From contig NC_047070.1 of the NCBI RefSeq assembly GCF_902459465.1, positions 13,392,001-13,456,000 of the forward strand: a stretch of 64,000 nucleotides of DNA. The letters run 5' to 3'. The first letter of the stretch is position 1. Every line of letters starts with the position of its first letter. Position numbers and translations under genes: made by a program. The notes under the pieces were generated by a model. It ran no database searches and was not told the DNA's origin. It was given only the letters and a program-made list of their open reading frames with translations. Positions 4,659-43,588 of this stretch are shown piece after piece. The DNA comes from Asterias rubens (taxonomy: Eukaryota).

Positions 4659-28934
<24,276 letters not shown>

Positions 28935-30150: not shown

Positions 30151-31852
30151 CAACGCTTTATTTTTTGGACACCAAGCGCTGAACCGCAGGTACCAGTCAG
30201 TTGAATTGACGACCTGCCGAGCCGCGGCCGAGTTGGAATAAACCATGCTGTAAAAGGGGTGTTATAAGGCAATGCAGCAGCGCGTGTGTGCTGTCCGTTT
30301 ACTATGCCCGCTGTTCACAATATAGTGGTAAAAAATGAGCAAATCTGCCGACTAGACCATTTCGCCCTTTACAGTTTGCCCATGCTTCGGAACCCTCCGG
30401 CTCTGCCATCGGGAGGGTTAAATTATCGCAACTACAAACTCGGCACCTGCAAACTCGCCACCTTGCAAACTCGCCACCCACAAACTCGGCACAAATACAA
30501 AATACGAAATGTTTGATTTTCACACTGCGTGGTAGGCCTCGGTTTGTTATCTGATAAAGTTCAGTTTATTTAGTTTTAAACCACCTCACAGTCACTTGAC
30601 TATTCTAGTGAATTGCTTGGTGGCAAGTTGTTAGTCAAAAAAAGGCCAATGCCGAGTTTGCATTGTGTCGACATTCTTGGTGCCGAGTGGGTGCCGAGTT
30701 TGCAACTGGTGCCAAGGTTGCAAGATCGCAAGGTTGCATGATTATGATCGAGGTACTAAAGTGTCCGCTATTCTTCTCACCACCACCATCATCCCATGTT
30801 CTCACCAAAGCACGTAAACTATCCTGGTGTCATGGGTTTTCAGTAGGTAGGATAATGGGAAAATTGTTCATAATCAAAGACTAAATTTTTTTAAATCATC
30901 TATCCAACCTTTTTACAATTACACTTGGTAGTCCGCTATTTTGGAGTGACGTCATATGTTTAATATTGCATTAGTGATTTAGTTGCGACAACCTACCGTC
31001 CTCCTGACGGTCAGGGAGGAGGGTTACGTTATCATAACTGTCTAGTGATATATACAAAAAACAAATCATCATTTTATAAATATTTGAGCATAACCTACGA
31101 CAGGAAACATTATTCTCAGCATGATTAAGCCTGATGAAAATACAGATCGTGAGTTAACAGCACAGCTTCTGTCACGGGTGTAGCTTGCACAGTCTCGCGG
31201 TAAACGGGACAAAGTTGGGGGTCGAAAACATGTGATTGTGAGGGTCGATCTGACAACAATCAACATGACCCTACGAATATGTTTAGTAATCAGGTTAATC
31301 AGGACTTACCAAAGACTGATGCTACTGAATAGTGACTGATAGTGATACAAAATGGACAGTTTTATCATGACGAGTTTGAAATGGCTGTTTGTGATCACTT
31401 CTTCATAAGCTTCTACTTTTGCGATTTATGTGACTTGTGCATCGCATGCATGACATGTGATTTGGACCAAGCTGAAGCTAGCCGCGAATTATCAGCCGCG
31501 AATTCCCAGCCGCGAATGCCAGCCGCGAATTCTCAATTTACGGCCGAAATGTCCAGCCGCTAATTCGAGCCGCCACGCCAGCCGCGAATTTCATTACCGA
31601 AGTAGTTTCACGAAGCGACAGGATTTCCTAAGTTGTTCACACACATAAGCCACTATTTCTTAAATTTTGTAAAATCATGGCAATTTTGAATGTTGCTTTT
31701 GTAAAATTTTGGTCATAGTAACAAAATGTAGGCCAAATTGGGTTAAGATAATTGAATTTTTAATGCTTTAGTCGATCCATCAAACTTTAATGGTTACTTA
31801 TCGACTTTCTGAATATCAGTTGTTTTAAAAATAAAAAAATAATAATAATAAT

Positions 31853-34130
31853 ATGTACCTCACATAATTAACAAATTGTTACTTTTTAGTGTTTAATCAT
31901 TAAGACCATTACATAACACATCGAAATATATCGTTGCAGCTAATTAGACCAACTAATTGGTGCCTAATTAAACCACTTTGTATGTTGTGGGTTTTGTCTC
32001 ATTTGAGGGGAATTTTTAGACTAAAAAATAACGTAAGTAGTCACTTTAAAACAAAATGTACCTCACATAATTAACAAATTGTTTTTTTTTAGTGTTTAAT
32101 CATTAAGACCATTACATAACACATCGAAATATATCGTTGCAGCCAATTAGACCAACTAATTGGTGCGTAATTAAACCACTTTATATGCTATGGGTTTTGT
32201 CTATTTTGAGGGGAAGTTTTAGTCTAAAAAATAGTGTAAGAAGTCACTTTAAAACAAAATGTACCTTACATAATTAACAAATTGTTACTTTTTAGTGTTT
32301 AATCATCAAGACCATTACATAACACATCGAAATATATCGTTGCAGCTAATTAGACCAACTAATTGGTGCCTAATTAAACCACTTTGTATGTTGTGGGTTT
32401 TGTCTCATTTGAGGGGAATTTTTAGACTAAAAAATAACGTAAGTAGTCACTTTAAAACAAAATGTACCTCACATAATTAACAAATTGTTTTTTTTTAGTG
32501 TTTAATCATTAAGACCATTACATAACACATCGAAATATATCGTTGCAGCTAATTAGACCAACTAATTGGTGCCTAATTAAACCACTTTGTATGTTGTGGG
32601 TTTTGTCTCATTTGAGGGGAATTTTTAGACTAAAAAATAACGTAAGTAGTCACTTTAAAACAAAATGTACCTCACATAATTAACAAATTGTTTTTTTTTA
32701 GTGTTTAATCATTAAGACCATTACATAACACATCGAAATATATCGTTGCAGCTAATTAGACCAACTAATTGGTGCGTAATTAAACCACTTTATATGCTAT
32801 GGGTTTTGTCTATTTTGAGGGGAAGTTTTAGTCAAAAAAATAGTGTAAGAAGTCACTTTAAAACAAAATGTACCTTACATAATTAACAAATTGTTACTTT
32901 TTAGTGTTTAATCATCAAGACCATTACATAACACATCGAAATATATCGTTGCAGCTAATTAGACCAACTAATTGGTGCCTAATTAAACCACTTTGTATGT
33001 TGTGGGTTTTGTCTCATTTGAAGGGAATTTTAATCAAAGAAATAACGTAAGTAGTCACTTTAAAACAAAATGTACCTCACATAATTAACAAATTGTTGCT
33101 TTTTAGTGTTTAATCATTAAGACCATTACATAACACATCGAAATATATCGTTGCAGCTAATTAGACCAACTAATTGATGCCTAATTAAACCACTTTGTAT
33201 GTTGTGGGTTTTGTCTCATTTGAAGGGAATTTTTAGACTAAAAAATAGTGTAAGTAGTCACTTTAAAACAAAATGTACTTCACATAATTAACAAATTGTT
33301 ACTTTTTAGTGTTTAATCATCAAGACCATCACATAACACATCGAAATATATCGTTGCAGCTAATTAGATCAACTAATTGGTGCCTAATTAAACCACTTAA
33401 TATGTTATGGGTTTTGTCTCATTTGAAGGGAATTTTTAGACTAAAAAATAGTGTAAGTAGTCACTTTAAAATAAAATGTACCTCACATAATTAACAAATT
33501 GTTTTTTTTAGTGTTTAATCATTAAGACCATTACATAACACATCGAAATATATCGTTGCAGCTAATTAGACCAACTAATTGGTGCCTAATTAAACCACTT
33601 TATATGTTGTGGGTTTTGTCTTATTTGAGGGGAATTTTTCAGACTAAAAAAAAATGTTTCCCAGGTTGTATCGTAATTTGGGTGTGATCCCTGGCTACAC
33701 GGCAGTTAACGGTTGTATGGCCTCTGACTGGCACCCCCGAACAAAGATATTGACAAAATAGGGACACCGCCAATAGGGCTAGATAGCTCAGTTGGTAGAG
33801 CGCCGGCACGTTAATCCGGAGGTCGTTGGTTCGAATCCCACTCTAGTAAATTCTTTGTTCAACCCCAAACATCATTAAAAAAAAATGTGTAAGTAGTCGC
33901 TTTAAAACAAAATGTACTTCACATATTTAACAAATTGTTACTTTTTATTGATTAATCATTAAGACCATTACATAACACATCGAAATATATCGTTGCAGCT
34001 AATTAGACCAACTAATTGGTGCCTAATTAAACCATTTTTTATGTTGTGGGTTTTGTCTCGTTTGGAGGGAATTTTTCTCAAAGAAATAATTTAGGTAGTC
34101 ACTTTAAAACAAAATGTACCTCACATAATT
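31853..34130 (+). repeat. ~203-bp satellite array, left arm (about 10-11 units)
   Basis: gtacctcacataattaacaaattg.. recurs every ~203 bp; interrupted by a tRNA-like insertion. Confidence 0.95.
33777..33849 (+). tRNA. Third tRNA-Asn(GTT)-like copy, inserted with ~120 bp of its 5' flank into the foldback left arm
   Basis: ~33655-33875 matches the reverse complement of ~6575-6790. Confidence 0.4.
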
Positions 34131-35169
34131 GACAAATAATGCTGGGCTGAGAGGCTCTCTCCGTTTCCTTTCGAGTATCCCTCCGTAAAGGTTGGATATT
34201 AGGATTACAAGTGCTGGTCATGTCTTACAAGTTTAGCCATTCGATTTTCATTTTAAAACGGCGCTGTCCAAAAAACCCGGAGGAAAAGGCTCTTGATGTG
34301 TATTACGGAACACCACCAGGCCGAAACTACGCAGATTGAAACTTATGGGATCAATTAAATTTGTTTTGAGTGCACATTGTATGTTTAAAAGGTCCCCAAA
34401 GGAAGGGGTTATTTATCAATATTATCCCTTTAACAGGAAGGTCTTTGTTCTTACTCAAATTCGGGAGGTACCGCAGCCGTGCGAGTTTCGTGTGTTTGTA
34501 ACTTTCAAATTAGTATATCTTAAACTGTAAACATTAAAGTCACCGTCCAATTTTAATAAAAAATGTATTCAGTCACAATTTTTCAGGGATAATAACGTCA
34601 TTTTTGTCGTCATTCAAAACTGCGATGTGTATTAAGGACATAACCAAAAAACATGAATACTGTAATCAAGCTGCAATCATAAAAATTACACTTTTACTTA
34701 TTGTTAAAAACCTTTATGGTGTTAGAGTGTTATTCCTTTAATCCCTTTGGTCATCTCCAGATAGAGACAGCATGGTGCCATTGACCGCTTAAGATCACTC
34801 ATCACTTGTCTCATGGAATGCAGCTTGAGCGGACCACACCACATTACGCAATTGAATAACATTAAAGTGAAACGACCCAGTCAGGGTGTGTTTACGTTGA
34901 ATTACTTGGGCACCTTAACTTAGTTTGACGACCATCTGCCAGGAGCACTCAGGCTACCAGTTCAAAGTATTAAGTTACACTAATTATAGTTAAGGAAATA
35001 TTCAGTGGTGTTTTGAAGTGGTCTTAATGACTAAATACTAAAAATTTACCATTTGTAAACCATTATGTAAAGTGCAGTTTGTTTTAGAGCGCTATTTACC
35101 TTATTTCTATGATATAAGAACACGCTTCAAAAGAGACAAACCCATACCGCATTTAAAGTGGTATAATTA

Positions 35170-37260
35170 GGCACCAATTAGTTGGTCTAATCGCGGTCTA
35201 ATTAGCTGCAACGAATTATGTGAGGTACATTTTGTTTTAAAGTGACTACTTACGTTATTACTTTAATTAAAAATTCTCTTCAAATGAGACAAAACCTACA
35301 ACAAATAAAGTGGTTTAATTAGGCACCAATTAGTTGGTCTAATTAGCTGCAACGGAATATTTCGATGTGTTATGTAATGGTCTTAATGATTAAACACTAA
35401 AAAGCAACAATTTGTTAATTATGTGAGGTACATTTTGTTTTAAAGTGACTACTTACACTATTTTTTAGTCTAAAAATTCCCTTCAAATGAGACAAAACCC
35501 ACAACATATAAAGTGGTTTAATTAGGCACCAATTAATTGGTCTAATTAGCTGCAACGATATATTTCGATGTGTTATGTAATGGTCTTGATGATTAAACAC
35601 TAAAAAGTAACAATTTGTTAATTATGTGAGGTACATTTTGTTTTAAAGTGACTACTTACGTTATTTCTTTGATTAAAAATTCCTTTCAAAAGAGACAAAA
35701 CCCATAGCATATAAAGTGGTTTAATTACGCACCAATTAGTTGGTCTAATTAGCTGCAACGATATATTTCGATGTGTTATGTAATGGTCTTAATGATTAAA
35801 CACTTAAAAAAAACGATTTGTTAATTATGTGAGGTACATTTTGTTTTAAAGTGACTACTTACACTATTTTTTAGTCTGAAAATTCCCTTCAAATGAGACA
35901 AAACCCATAACATATTAAGTGGTTTAATTAGGCACCAATTAGTTGATCTAATTAGCTGCAACGATATATTTCGATGTGTTATGTGATGGTCTTGATGATT
36001 AAACACTAAAAAGTAACAATTTGTTAATTATGTGAAGTACATTTTGTTTTAAAGTGACTACTTACACTATTTTTTAGTCTGAAAAATCCCTTCAAAATAG
36101 ACAAAACCCATAGCATATAAAGTGGTTTAATTAGGCACCAATTAGTTGGTCTAATTAGCTGCAACGATATACTTCGATGTGTTATGTAATGGTCTTGATG
36201 ATTAAACAATAAAAAGTAACACTTTGTTAATTATGTGAGGTACATTTTGTTTTAAAGTGACTACTTACACTATTTTTTAGTCTCAAAATTCCCTTCAAAT
36301 GAGACAAAACCCACAACATACAAAGTGGTTTAATTAGGCACCAATTAATTGGTCTAATTAGCTGCAACGATATATTTCGATGTGTTATGTAATGGTCTTG
36401 ATGATTAAACACTAAAAAGTAACAATTTGTTAATTATGTGAGGTACATTTTGTTTTAAAGTGACTACTTACACTATTTTTTAGTCTAAAAATTCCCTTCA
36501 AATGAGACAAAACCCACAACATACAAAGTGGTTTAATTAGGCACCAATTATTTGGTCTAATTAGCTGCAACGATATATTTCGATGTGTTATGTAATGGTC
36601 TTAATGATTAAACACTAAAAAGTAACAGTTTGTTAATTATGTGAAGTACATTTTGTTTTAAAGTGACTACTTACACTATTTTTTAGTCTAAAAATTCCCC
36701 TCAAATGAGACAAAACCCATAGCATATCAAGTGGTTTAATTACGCACCAATTAGTTGGTCTAATTAGCTGCAACGATATATTTCGATGTGTTATGTGATG
36801 GTCTTGATGATTAAACACTAAAAAGTAACAATTTGTTAATTATGTGAAGTACATTTTGTTTTAAAGTGACTACTTACACTATTTTTTAGTCTAAAAATTC
36901 CCTTCAAATGAGACAAAACCCATAACATATAAAGTGGTTTAATTAGGCACCAATTAGTTGGTCTAATTAGCTGCAACGATAAATTTCGATGTGTTATGTA
37001 ATGGTCTTAATGATTAAACACTAAAAGCAACAATTTGTTAATTATGTGAGGTACATTTTGTTTTAAAGTGACTACTTACACTATTTTTTAGTCTAAAAAT
37101 TCCCTTCAAATGAGACAAAACCCACAACATATAAAGTGGTTTAATTAGGCACCAATTAGTTAGTCTAATTAGCTGCAACGATATATTTCGATGTGTTATG
37201 TAATGGTCTTAATGATTTAACACTAAAAAGTAACAATTTGTTAATTATGTGAGGTACATA
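35170..37260 (-). repeat. ~203-bp satellite array, right arm, inverted (about 10-11 units)
   Basis: Reverse complement of the left-arm unit; the 61-aa ORFs at 203-bp spacing are a by-product. Confidence 0.95.
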
Positions 37261-38631
37261 TTATTATTATTATTTCTTTATTTTTAAAACAACTGATATT
37301 CAGAAAGTCGATATGTAACCATTAAAGTTTGATGGATCGACTAAAGCATTAAAAATTAAATTATCTTAACATTTTGTTACTATGACCGAAATTTTACAAA
37401 AGCAACATTCAAAATTGCCATGATTTTACAAAATTTAAGAAATAGTGGCTTATGTGTGTGAACAACTTAGGAAATCCTGTCGCTTCGTGAAACTACTTCG
37501 GTAATGAAATTCGCGGCTGGCGTGGCGGCTCGAATTAGCGGCTGGACTTTTCGGCCGTAAATTGAGAATTCGCGGCTGGCATTTGCGGCTGGGAATTCGC
37601 GGCTGAGAATTCGCGGCTAGCTTCAGCTTGGTGTGATTTGGTCGGCTGCACGGACGGACGGACGACTGCCTTCGCATCATTTTAACTATAGAGGGCGTCC
37701 TTCATAAACACGCGAGGTGCACCCACAGGGTGCATGAACCACACCGTAAAATAAACTTCCAATGCTAAAATATTCAAAAATACTCAACAAATATTTAAAG
37801 TCTCTCGCTCGGCGTCTTGAAAACCAGACACAAAAACTTCAGATATTTTTTAAAATTGTTGTTGGTAGGTTAACCGTTTGGAATCTTTGGTAATTACCCT
37901 ACTGAAGAAAAAAAAACCGACAATGTAACTTTTTCCCAAACCAACTCGTTGCTAGTTCAGGAGTCCCATTCCAGAGCCAAATAATAGAACCAAGTTTAGG
38001 CCTACATTTATAAAATCTCCTCAAAAGTTGAAGCACAGAGCCCTCATGTAACGATACATTGTTGTAATTACACATTACACGATCTTATTGTTCAAAATAT
38101 TTAAAGGGAATACAAAATTATGATAATCAGCTTTGGCGCATGAATGTTTGCCTTTTTAGTGTGGTAGGCCACACCCCGAGAATGCGGGTGCGTCAAACAA
38201 TGCTAAACGCTAACAATACTTTAAAGTAAAACAATAAAAAATACTTACACCTCCCGATGAGTCTAGTGTCTCAGCAAGTCAGTCTTTACATCAATGCGTA
38301 CAACTATCTACTTGTTATTGATACCCCCATGCAAAACAAATTAAAAACATGTAGACGCAGAACTCCTGCCTGGTTGACATTACTCATTGGTAGTATAATC
38401 TAGCGACTTGATGGCAAGTCTAGCCTCGCGACCTTCGATCGAGTGTGCAATCAATACATTTCCACACTTCCTTCATGAAATAACGTTTGGTTTGGGGCCT
38501 CGATCATTCTTGCACGATTTACAGTTACGTATTTTGTTACAGCCTTGCTGTTAATTCGTTCGATAGGAAACTATTGGTTCATGGTTCAACACGATTCTCA
38601 AAGCCATGATTTACAAACTGACTGAAACAAT

Positions 38632-41700: not shown

Positions 41701-43588
41701 CCAAAAAAAAAAAAAGCATTTGCTACCTTGAGAAGTATGCGTATTGCTTTCTTTGATTCTTTTTAGCAATCGCCGTTCGCCAATGAAACACTGCAGAGAT
41801 GTATCGTGGTGGGAAATGGAGGAATTCTCACCAATAGCCGATGCGGTACAAACATTGATAGAGCTGACTTCGTCTTTAGGTAATCAGTTCTTATACTTTG
41901 CTTTGAAGGCAGCGGACACTTTTGGTAATTACCCAAAACAATTATTAGCTTAGCATTACACCTGACTTGGTACCGAGTCATGTGAGAGGTTGATAGTATA
42001 AAACATTGTGAGATACGGCTCACTCTGAAGTGACGTTGTTTTCGAGAAAGAAGTAATTTTCCACGAATTTGATTTCGAGACCTCAGAATTAGATTTTATC
42101 GTCTAGAAATCAAGCATTTGAAAGCACATGTACACAACTTCGTGTGACAAGCGTGTTTTTTTCTTTCATTATTACCTCGCAAATTCGACGACTAATTGAG
42201 CTCAAATTTTCACAGGTTTGTGCTTCTATGCATATGTTGAAATACACCAAGTGAGAAGACTGGTCTTTGAAAGTTACCAAGGGTGTCCAGTGTCTTTAAC
42301 TCTCGGTGATGTTGGTAAATAAAAACAAAGATTAGCAGCATATTATGGGAATTTTCTTTGAGTGGACCCATGAGCTCTGAATCATTATAACTGACTATTT
42401 CATTTCTTCGTTCGTTTTTTGTTTTAAACAGTTCAACGTGATGTGCGCCGTTATTATTTTTGGTTTAATTTGTTGAACTTCTGCTATATGTAGACTATAT
42501 CACCAAGTTCATTTCAATGCAATTATTGTCATTACCCCTTTATCTTTATGTCTACTTAATTTAGGTGCAACACGCCACCATTGAGGGGATACGCAGAGGA
42601 TGTTGGAACGAAGACTAACATTGCTTCAATTAACCCTTCAATAATTGCCTCAAAGTAAGGACAATGTTTACTGCAAATTTCCCAATTTACTGCAATTTGA
42701 ATCTCTGATGTAACAATAAATATATATTTTTTATTTTCACTCGTCAGATACAAGCGATTGCTGGATAAGGGACATAAGTCAACATTTCTCAATGATGTGA
42801 AGCGATTTGGCCGGCTTCTTGTCCCGCTATACGGCGTACCATCTGGGTACGCGTACATCGTTCCCGCCTTGAAACTTCTACAAACTAGCAACAACTCCAC
42901 CCCTAAAAAAATGGTGATCATCAACCCTAACCATTTCAGAGCTGTGGCTGGAATATGGGCCGAGATGGGTCTGAAAGATCGCATGACAACGGGTAGGTCT
43001 AGTAAAGTTGTATCGAATCAAGCTTCTTGGATAAACAGTGGGTTCGGGGTTAAATCACGCATGCGGTGGTCTGTGTTTCACTCGAACGCGATTAGTCGAT
43101 AAATTCGTAATAACATGGCAAACAATGACGGCGAAGATCGAAGACGAACAAAAATGTACCGGCTATACGAAACATTACTTGTTTAATAACAACATAGGAA
43201 ATAATAATTATTATCCAAGCAATTAACATAATTCTAATGGCATGGCAAGAAACTACTATCTATCGCAATTGTTTGTCTGTGAATAGATTAGAAAGGGTAA
43301 TAAAACGTTCTTCTTGATCACGTAACTACAATCATTCATTTCTTTTCTAACATTACAGGTTTTTATCTGACGTCATTGGCTTTATCTGTTTGTGGTTCCG
43401 TGGAGTTGTTTGGATTTTGGCCGTTCCCGCTCGATACCATCGGTAATCCAGTCCCATACCATTACTACGGGAAAGACAAAATTACAAAAGGCGTGCACGA
43501 TTTTAATTTAGAATTTGCTTTGTTGTATCAGTTGCACACAGATGGTGTGTTACGGATGCACGTAGGGTCATGCGTGTCGAACACATAG
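38632..43588 (+). CDS. Alpha-2,8-sialyltransferase-like (GT29/ST8Sia family), 7 coding exons, 390 aa
   Basis: Exons 38632-38783, 39006-39206, 39434-39575, 41767-41879, 42565-42654, 42748-42992, 43359-43588 (1173 nt, phase-consistent). N-terminal signal anchor. Sialylmotif L [33 protein letters not shown], motif S TTGFYLTSLALSVCGSVELFGFWPF, motif III YHYY, VS HDFNLE, C-terminal Cys HVGSC. Confidence 0.92.
39006..39206 (+). CDS. ST8Sia-like exon 2 (stem)
   Basis: AG/GT bounded, W.SNET..R motif. Confidence 0.78.
39434..39575 (+). CDS. ST8Sia-like exon 3
   Basis: RKLNSIMDAKE..MTEDIYTSLPE, donor GAG|gtatta. Confidence 0.78.
40071..40268. mobile_element. Palindromic MITE
   Basis: gtgacgtcaatcgaggcagactttgcc and mirror. 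Confidence 0.7.
40884..41216. mobile_element. Kolobok-like MITE copy
   Basis: TTAA flanks, family body. Confidence 0.75.
41767..41879 (+). CDS. ST8Sia-like exon 4 (sialylmotif L)
   Basis: [21 protein letters not shown]..DFVF. Confidence 0.92.
41907..42295. mobile_element. Kolobok-like MITE copy
   Basis: Family TIR and body. Confidence 0.75.
42565..42654 (+). CDS. ST8Sia-like exon 5
   Basis: CNTPPLRGYAEDVGTKT..NPSII. Confidence 0.92.
42748..42992 (+). CDS. ST8Sia-like exon 6
   Basis: ..INPNHFRAVAGIWAEMGLKDRMTT, donor G|gtaggt. Confidence 0.88.
43359..43588 (+). CDS. ST8Sia-like exon 7 (motifs S, III, VS)
   Basis: GFYLTSLALSVCGSVELFGFWPF..YHYY..HDFNLE..HVGSCVSNT*. Confidence 0.92.

What the first reader, a model, noticed from the sequence alone, without database searches (positions are those of the whole stretch)
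31457..37641. Intact 6.2-kb foldback transposon carrying satellite arrays in both arms
Seen: exact 9-bp TSD (GTGATTTGG). The arms are modular: an outer domain of short cagccgcgaat motifs, a ~270-bp unique inner domain, then ~10-11 tandem ~203-bp TAATTA-rich units in opposite orientation on each side of a ~1-kb non-coding core. Known: 9-bp TSDs and modular TIRs characterise MuDR-related foldbacks such as Drosophila FB and Tetris and sea-urchin TU elements; Tetris TIR repeats seeded a satellite. Inference: this is a recent, mobile satellite carrier that could disperse nucleosome-length arrays and form a large hairpin/cruciform between the EARS2 promoter and the sialyltransferase gene.
Basis: partly seen in the sequence, partly recalled or inferred. 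Interest (0 to 1): 0.72.

Follow-up and report, generated by a model that had tools for sequence, protein, structure and literature searches.

The report
Young foldback transposon in a starfish
This is a real, structurally intact 6.2-kb "foldback" jumping gene without a transposase of its own, one of about 13 copies in this starfish-type genome; it moved very recently but is an ordinary new member of a known kind of transposon.

Summary
[quoted passage not shown] Each arm has a terminus plus seven copies of an 11-14-bp motif, a ~260-bp unique domain and about ten 203-bp tandem units. The two arms enclose a 926-bp non-coding core.

It is a transposon, not an artefact. The genome holds about 13 copies with the same 25-nt terminus. 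Seven have perfect, unrelated 9-bp target duplications. Short-read contigs from two studies bridge the left junction.

A sister copy 5.75 Mb away is 100% identical in the 387-bp terminal arm segment compared and 99.9% in the core, but has a different target duplication, so the last jump was very recent.

Canonical copies carry two arm types, A and B, about 85% alike. The window lineage is a symmetrised A/A' variant.

The 203-bp unit occurs only inside these elements, so no free satellite exists in this assembly. No copy encodes a protein, and no transposase gene with these ends was found.

Assignment to the Mutator/foldback superfamily rests on the 9-bp duplications and the architecture. A separate, apparently intact NOF-like foldback element in the same genome adds indirect support.

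The parts
31457..31465 (.). Left target-site duplication GTGATTTGG
   Evidence: Identical 9-mer abuts both termini
31466..31590 (+). Left outer domain: terminus ACCAAGCTGAAGCTAGCCGCGAATT plus seven AGCCGCGAATT-type motifs at a spacing of about 14 bp. The first ~105 nt are almost invariant in all arms of all copies.
31591..31852 (+). Left unique inner domain (arm type A)
   Evidence: Alignment and tree of arms
31853..33651 (+). Left array: 8.9 units of 203 bp, 28% G+C, three TAATTA per unit, with a local 3-unit higher-order duplication
33652..33886 (+). Nested insertion between A-runs. It is a copy of a very abundant ~219-bp repeat that carries a tRNA-Asn(GTT)-like sequence at 33777-33849. It is absent from the sister copy.
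33887..34135 (+). Remainder of the left array (1.2 units)
34136..35061 (+). Non-coding core (loop). Present in 7 copies plus one fragment and found nowhere else in the genome.
35062..35213 (-). Degenerate innermost unit of the right arm
35214..37259 (-). Right array: 10.1 units of 203 bp in inverted orientation
37260..37507 (-). Right unique inner domain (type A', 98% identical to the left one, with a 14-bp deletion)
37508..37632 (-). Right outer domain with terminus and motif repeats
37633..37641 (.). Right target-site duplication GTGATTTGG

Best explanation
The element is a non-autonomous, foldback-type cut-and-paste (class II) DNA transposon. It inserted by a 9-bp staggered cut into the intergenic region upstream of an EARS2-like gene.

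Shown:
- The family has about 13 members of 2-14 kb, all with the same 25-nt terminus.
- Insertions are flanked by unrelated 9-bp duplications.
- The outer ~105 nt (terminus plus repeated AGCCGCGAATT motifs) are nearly invariant, while the inner arm domains fall into two types, A and B, about 85% alike.
- The window copy and a copy 5.75 Mb away belong to a derived lineage in which the B arm was replaced by a second A arm. That lineage still transposed afterwards.
- The 203-bp arrays change copy number locally.

Inferred:
- The repeated subterminal motifs are the binding sites of a transposase supplied in trans.
- That transposase is of the Mutator-like foldback group (MULE-NOF, Rehavkus or Phantom type), because these give 9-bp duplications and carry tandem repeats in long inverted ends.
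- The source gene is either lost from this individual, diverged in its ends, or is the NOF-like gene on contig C5.
For: - TSD and termini.
- 25 termini genome-wide against 0 for the reversed-pattern control.
- Paired termini at about 10 loci.
- Perfect 9-bp TSDs at the window and at L031, L032, L033, L034, L035 and L039. L030 matches 8 of 9 and the 14-kb C4 copy shares 8 bp.
- Arm types A and B, and the A/A' lineage (WIN_L = L030_R at 100%, WIN_R = L030_L at 100%).
- Conserved outer 105 nt.
- Unit and core confined to the family.
- No ORF and no transposase remnant.
- Contigs of runs X1 and X15 (two studies) cross the left junction. An X4 contig joins the terminus to the flank of the sister copy.
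- Literature: foldbacks with 9-bp TSDs and ~14-bp tandem repeats in the TIRs encode MULE transposases (Tm1, PMC3169594). Rehavkus elements have 9-bp TSDs, long TIRs, subterminal tandem repeats and a PHD finger (PMC6446971 and bioRxiv 10.1101/2024.12.02.626372). Most foldbacks appear to belong to Mutator (PMC4079207).
- The same genome holds an intact 1046-aa MULE + Peptidase_C48 + PHD ORF between inverted 244-bp arrays.
Against: - No copy with these ends encodes a protein.
- The four MULE-domain loci share no DNA with the element.
- No terminus or motif hit lies near the NOF-like element.
- 9-bp duplications also fit Merlin, which is young and intact in this genome.
- One copy (L038) has no TSD.
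- The right junction and the internal palindrome were not checked with reads.
Confidence: 0.85

Rival explanations
1. The family is a non-autonomous derivative of, or is cross-mobilised by, the young Merlin (IS1595-like) transposons of this genome, which make 8-9-bp duplications.
For: At least 8 loci carry intact 312-aa DDE_Tnp_IS1595 reading frames with near-identical scores. An earlier scan note describes a young Merlin family. Both families were active recently.
Against: No exact match to the 14-nt foldback terminus, and no 25-nt match with up to 3 mismatches, lies near any listed Merlin locus. The TSDs here are 9 bp in seven copies, with one 8-bp shared repeat (C4) and one 8-of-9 match beside a terminal deletion (L030). 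Long array-bearing arms are not a Merlin hallmark (my own knowledge).
Confidence: 0.1
2. The family is mobilised specifically by the NOF-like MULE + C48 + PHD protein encoded at C5:16412781-16415918, inside a foldback element of 19 kb or more with 244-bp arrays.
For: This is the only long intact MULE-type ORF found. The Atlas nearest cluster is named after the Drosophila NOF-FB protein (score 0.95). Inverted arrays flank the ORF. Drosophila FB also gives 9-bp TSDs (my own knowledge).
Against: The fetched 10 kb share no DNA with the window element. The 244-bp and 203-bp units are unrelated. No foldback terminus or motif lies within that region. The ends of the C5 element were not read.
Confidence: 0.15
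3. The palindrome is an assembly artefact, either a fold-back chimeric long read or a collapsed repeat.
For: Large near-perfect palindromes are a known long-read artefact. Array copy numbers differ between the two near-identical copies. Internal reads were not examined.
Against: The same architecture recurs at about 10 loci on 8 contigs, each with its own TSD. Short-read contigs of two studies bridge the left junction with 0 and 3 differences, at single-copy depth in run X1.
Confidence: 0.02

Closest known systems
Drosophila Foldback (FB / FB-NOF) elements
   Same: Long modular inverted arms built of tandem repeats. Sizes vary widely among copies. Most copies are non-coding. TSDs are 9 bp. A NOF-like protein gene sits between inverted arrays elsewhere in this genome.
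   Different: There is no sequence similarity to test here. The arms have a unique ~260-bp domain and a single 203-bp repeat class, not repeats that lengthen inwards (my own knowledge of FB). No coding copy with these ends was found.
Tetris (Drosophila virilis foldback; PMC4079207)
   Same: Three-domain arms with tandem repeats of about 220 bp (203 bp here), a non-coding middle domain, 8-9-bp TSDs, few structurally complete copies, and no autonomous copy found.
   Different: The Tetris repeats also form kb-sized free satellite arrays. Here the 203-bp unit occurs only inside the elements. It shares no stretch with the terminal domain.
Tm1 of root-knot nematodes and Rehavkus elements (Mutator-related foldbacks; PMC3169594, PMC6446971)
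   Same: 9-bp TSDs. Tandem motifs of about 14 bp in the TIRs (Tm1). Long TIRs with subterminal tandem repeats (Rehavkus).
   Different: Those families have coding members with MULE transposases (Phantom-like, or with a PHD finger). None with these ends is present here. Rehavkus was reported only from arthropods and annelids in PMC6446971.
Sea-urchin TU elements
   Same: An echinoderm host and modular inverted repeats whose outer domain is made of short tandem repeats. This rests on my own knowledge and on the citation in PMC4079207.
   Different: I recall TU target duplications as 8 bp, which I could not check. The paper is not held, so no sequence comparison was possible.

Membership tests
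Foldback-type transposons (structural class) | Long inverted arms that contain tandem repeats, with little or no loop | tested here: met
   Copies occur with and without the 926-bp core.
Foldback-type transposons (structural class) | Target-site duplications at independent insertions | tested here: met
   Seven perfect, unrelated 9-bp TSDs
Foldback-type transposons (structural class) | Size differences among copies caused by repeat number | tested here: met
   Copies range from 2 to 14 kb, with 3 to 22 full units per arm
Mutator superfamily (MULE-NOF / Rehavkus / Phantom) | An autonomous member with the same ends that encodes a MULE DDE transposase | tested here: not met
   All 25 termini belong to non-coding copies. 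MULE loci share no DNA with the element.
Mutator superfamily (MULE-NOF / Rehavkus / Phantom) | TSD of about 9 bp | tested here: met
.
Merlin superfamily | Termini shared with a Merlin transposase-encoding element | tested here: inconclusive
   No foldback-type terminus lies near the Merlin loci among the exact 14-mers and the 25-mers with up to 3 mismatches. The one-mismatch list was cut off after contig C4, and the Merlin ends could not be read.
Tetris-like satellite seeding | The same repeat unit also forms free arrays outside the transposon | tested here: not met
   All 24 candidate places were scored. All hits lie in the foldback copies except two short, roughly 72% fragments.
TU elements of sea urchins | Sequence homology of the inverted repeats, and an 8-bp TSD | not testable with these tools
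   No TU sequence or paper is held. The TSD here is 9 bp.

The most novel reading that the evidence does not exclude
The 203-bp family and the NOF-like element of 19 kb or more on C5 could together be a living FB-NOF/Rehavkus-type foldback system in a deuterostome. In this reading the NOF-like MULE + C48 + PHD protein, or a lost sister of it, recognises the AGCCGCGAATT repeats. Replacement of one arm by the other (B to A') does not stop transposition. The elements drop clusters of 60 or more TAATTA homeodomain-type sites next to promoters such as the EARS2-like one.
Probability: 0.15. Interest if true: 0.5.

Novelty: new member of a known kind. Interest (0 to 1): 0.36.

Why it matters
It gives a well-delimited, very young foldback family in an echinoderm. 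The exact ends, the target-duplication length, two arm types and a symmetrised, still-mobile derivative are all defined.

Foldback elements are hard to assemble. Their transposases and their link to satellite DNA are still debated.

Here the array-bearing arms can be studied copy by copy. A candidate NOF-like transposase gene in the same genome makes a direct transposition test possible.

For genome annotation, it explains a 6.2-kb palindrome about 2.5 kb upstream of an EARS2-like gene as a transposon insertion.

Tried and rejected
- Looked for coding capacity in the element and in all copies. I found none. The only long ORF, in the 14-kb C4 copy, belongs to a nested LINE.
- Rfam gave only the nested tRNA-like sequence.
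- Searched the genome for the MULE domain. The four loci found share no DNA with the element.
- Searched for the Merlin domain and found many intact copies. I did not try to obtain those letters another way.
- A 14-nt terminus search gave 276 hits against 58 for the control, but the list was cut off after contig C4. Recurrent variants (ACCAAACTGAAGCT, ACCGAGCTGAAGCT) may be other repeat families and were not followed.
- The fragment on C16 with the same motif is a 5'-truncated, diverged arm, not an autonomous element.
- Two metagenome scans found nothing, or only chance hits in GC-rich prokaryotic contigs.
- The 203-bp unit has no similarity to the terminal domain, so there is no sign of secondary binding sites as in Galileo or Tetris. 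It has none to the 244-bp unit either.
- The two sides of the NOF-like ORF within the fetched 10 kb showed no similarity to each other. The inverted arrays only became visible genome-wide.
- The TU-element paper is not held.
- The other sialyltransferase exons were not located. It therefore remains open whether the element is strictly intergenic or lies in a 5' intron of that gene.
Full report

- The 9-mer GTGATTTGG lies at 31457-31465 and 37633-37641. It directly abuts inverted termini that begin ACCAAGCTGAAGC.
- The element proper is 31466-37632 (6,167 bp).
- Each arm starts with an outer domain in which the motif AGCCGCGAATT, or a close variant, occurs seven times within 125 nt at a spacing of about 14 bp.
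- A unique domain of about 260 bp follows, then tandem 203-bp units of 28% G+C.
- The left array (31853-33651, 8.9 units) continues at 33887-34135.
- The right array (35214-37259, 10.1 units, plus a degenerate unit at 35062-35213) is inverted.
- The core, 34136-35061, has no reading frame above 64 aa.
- After removing the insertion, the arms are 94.1% identical over about 2.42 kb, and 98% identical in the outer 390 nt.

**It is a transposon family.** The window is C10:13392001-13456000 of a 417.6-Mb, 150-contig genome. Earlier notes of this scan call it the starfish Asterias rubens, which I did not verify.

- The first 387 nt of the left arm hit 29 places.
- The 25-nt terminus occurs 25 times with up to 3 mismatches, against 0 for the reversed control.
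- The termini pair up in inverted orientation at about 10 loci, 2 to 14 kb apart. There are also three truncated copies and a 152-bp mini-element.

Flanks diverge immediately outside ACCAAG. The target duplications are:

| Copy | Target duplication |
|---|---|
| Window | GTGATTTGG |
| L031 | GCGGCGGGG |
| L032 | ACAAAAAGT |
| L033 | ACGGATCAG |
| L034 | TCGTTCGAC |
| L035 | GTTTGTCAT |
| L039 | CTATAAAAC |
| L030 | AATAGACC(T), 8 of 9, beside a 7-nt terminal deletion |
| C4 (14 kb) | shares CATAGTCT (8 bp) |
| L038 | none |

The seven perfect duplications are unrelated to each other. The copies differ in unit number (3 to 22 full units per arm). The core is present in seven copies; in others the two arrays meet head to head. 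This is the classical picture of a foldback family moved by a transposase that makes 9-bp staggered cuts.

**Not an artefact.** Logan contigs of run X1 (probably the source individual) cover 31117-31495 with no difference. Their depth, 173, is like that of neighbouring single-copy contigs (166 and 188). A contig of run X15, from another study, covers 31145-31495 with three differences. Both cross the left junction by the 30 nt that a 31-mer graph allows.

A contig of run X4 joins the terminus to the flank of the sister copy on C10. In the marine metagenome X3, the flank contig stops exactly at 31465. A branch between filled and empty alleles would give this, but at depth 6 it is only a hint. 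The right junction and the interior were not examined, because only one call was allowed.

**Age and arm types.** A tree of the first 420 nt of all arms shows two types, A and B, about 85% alike. Ordinary copies carry one of each. The first ~105 nt, which hold the terminus and most of the motif repeats, are almost invariant in both types. The differences start after that. This fits selection on transposase recognition in the outer domain.

The window copy and C10:7669298-7674429 (L030) carry two A-type arms that are 98% alike. The window's left arm equals L030's right arm (100%) and vice versa. The cores differ at 1 of 926 positions. Their target duplications differ.

So the B arm was replaced by a second A arm first. 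That symmetrised element then transposed very recently. Since then the arrays have changed unit number, and the window copy alone carries the nested insertion.

Unit-by-unit comparison shows the two arrays are not mirror images. The left one contains a 3-unit higher-order duplication. Unit identity within a copy (about 94%) is close to that between the most closely related copies (91-94%).

**Satellite carrier?** The 203-bp unit is found only in the foldback copies. All 24 candidate places were scored, and only two short fragments of about 72% identity lie elsewhere. The core is likewise confined to the family. The arrays are therefore dispersed by the element. No free satellite has arisen in this assembly, unlike Tetris.

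The unit carries three TAATTA per 203 bp: 26 in the left array against about 3 expected from a first-order model. It has no copy of the terminal motif and no similarity to the terminal domain.

**Which transposase?** No copy encodes a protein. The 1180-aa ORF in the 14-kb C4 copy belongs to a nested LINE.

The MULE domain occurs at four places. One is an intact 1046-aa ORF with MULE, Ulp1-type peptidase C48 and a C-terminal PHD finger. Its nearest Atlas cluster is named after the 120.7-kDa protein of the Drosophila NOF-FB element, with a score of 0.95; this is a lead, not an alignment. Its sequence relatives are MULE/PHD proteins of invertebrates.

Inverted arrays of an unrelated 244-bp unit flank this ORF at C5:16401974-16406104 and C5:16416930-16421136. 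That makes a second, coding foldback family with several non-coding relatives. It shares no DNA with the window element in the 10 kb I hold, and no foldback terminus or motif lies in that region.

Merlin transposons, which give 8-9-bp duplications, are intact and multi-copy. No foldback-type terminus lies near them among the exact matches. I could not read their ends.

The literature links 9-bp duplications and repeat-bearing long TIRs mainly to Mutator-related elements: Tm1, Rehavkus and most foldbacks. It also warns that foldback structure has arisen in other superfamilies. I therefore put the Mutator-like assignment at about one half. The statement that this is a non-autonomous foldback transposon I put at 0.85.

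**Context.** An exon encoding the start of the class I Glu/Gln-tRNA synthetase catalytic domain lies at 28665-28934 on the minus strand (E 9e-23). The last exon of a family-29 sialyltransferase lies at 43304-43585 on the plus strand (E 6e-15). The element thus sits about 2.5 kb upstream of the EARS2-like gene. The other sialyltransferase exons were not found.

**Verdict.** This is a correct first reading of a real and very young foldback transposon. It is a new member of a known kind, with some instructive details: two arm types, a still-mobile symmetrised lineage, and a possible NOF-like partner family. The transposase remains unidentified.

Noticed in passing
G000:C5:16401974-16421136 (L053 = C5:16408000-16417999): A second foldback family with a coding loop. 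Inverted arrays of a 244-bp unit, about 4 kb each, flank an intact 1046-aa ORF (L053:4782-7919, minus strand) with MULE, Peptidase_C48 and PHD domains. The Atlas nearest cluster is named after the Drosophila NOF-FB protein. Non-coding arrays of the same unit lie at C1:4463696-4467064 (head to head), C12:3291375-3294578 and C2:12912300-12914726. The termini were not read.
   Followed up: partly
window 33652-33886; e.g. G000:C13:11051781-11055114, C10:16027403-16030128: The insertion in the left array is a copy of a very abundant ~219-bp repeat (2,637 candidate places) that contains a tRNA-Asn(GTT)-like sequence (Rfam tRNA, 47 bits). Elsewhere the repeat forms tandem arrays with a 312-bp period, often as two head-to-head inverted blocks.
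   Followed up: partly
L036:1371-4913 (G000:C4:9747961-9751503): A LINE with an open 1180-aa endonuclease/reverse-transcriptase frame is nested in the left arm of the 14-kb foldback copy on C4.
   Followed up: no
G000:C11:8033983, C18:8669560, C20:9435452, C3:13709491, C8:15784245, C29:55918, C13:7815259 and others: At least eight loci carry intact 312-aa DDE_Tnp_IS1595 (Merlin-type) frames with near-identical scores.
   Followed up: partly
L043:1001-1151 (G000:C5:11858871-11859022): A 152-bp mini-element made only of two diverged outer domains of the foldback family (MITE-like). Its target duplication is degenerate.
   Followed up: partly
window 30449-30497, 30792-30889 and 31086-31232: Stretches just left of the element have k-mer depths of thousands to hundreds of thousands in all four runs. 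They are therefore high-copy repeats. The last 230 nt before the insertion are single copy.
   Followed up: no
L038 and L039 (G000:C15:6549621-6555293, C18:4701726-4705617): These two copies share a distinctive left arm (99% alike, only about 70% to the others) and a core lacking its first 201 nt. One has a perfect TSD and the other none. They may be an older subfamily or the product of a recombination event.
   Followed up: no
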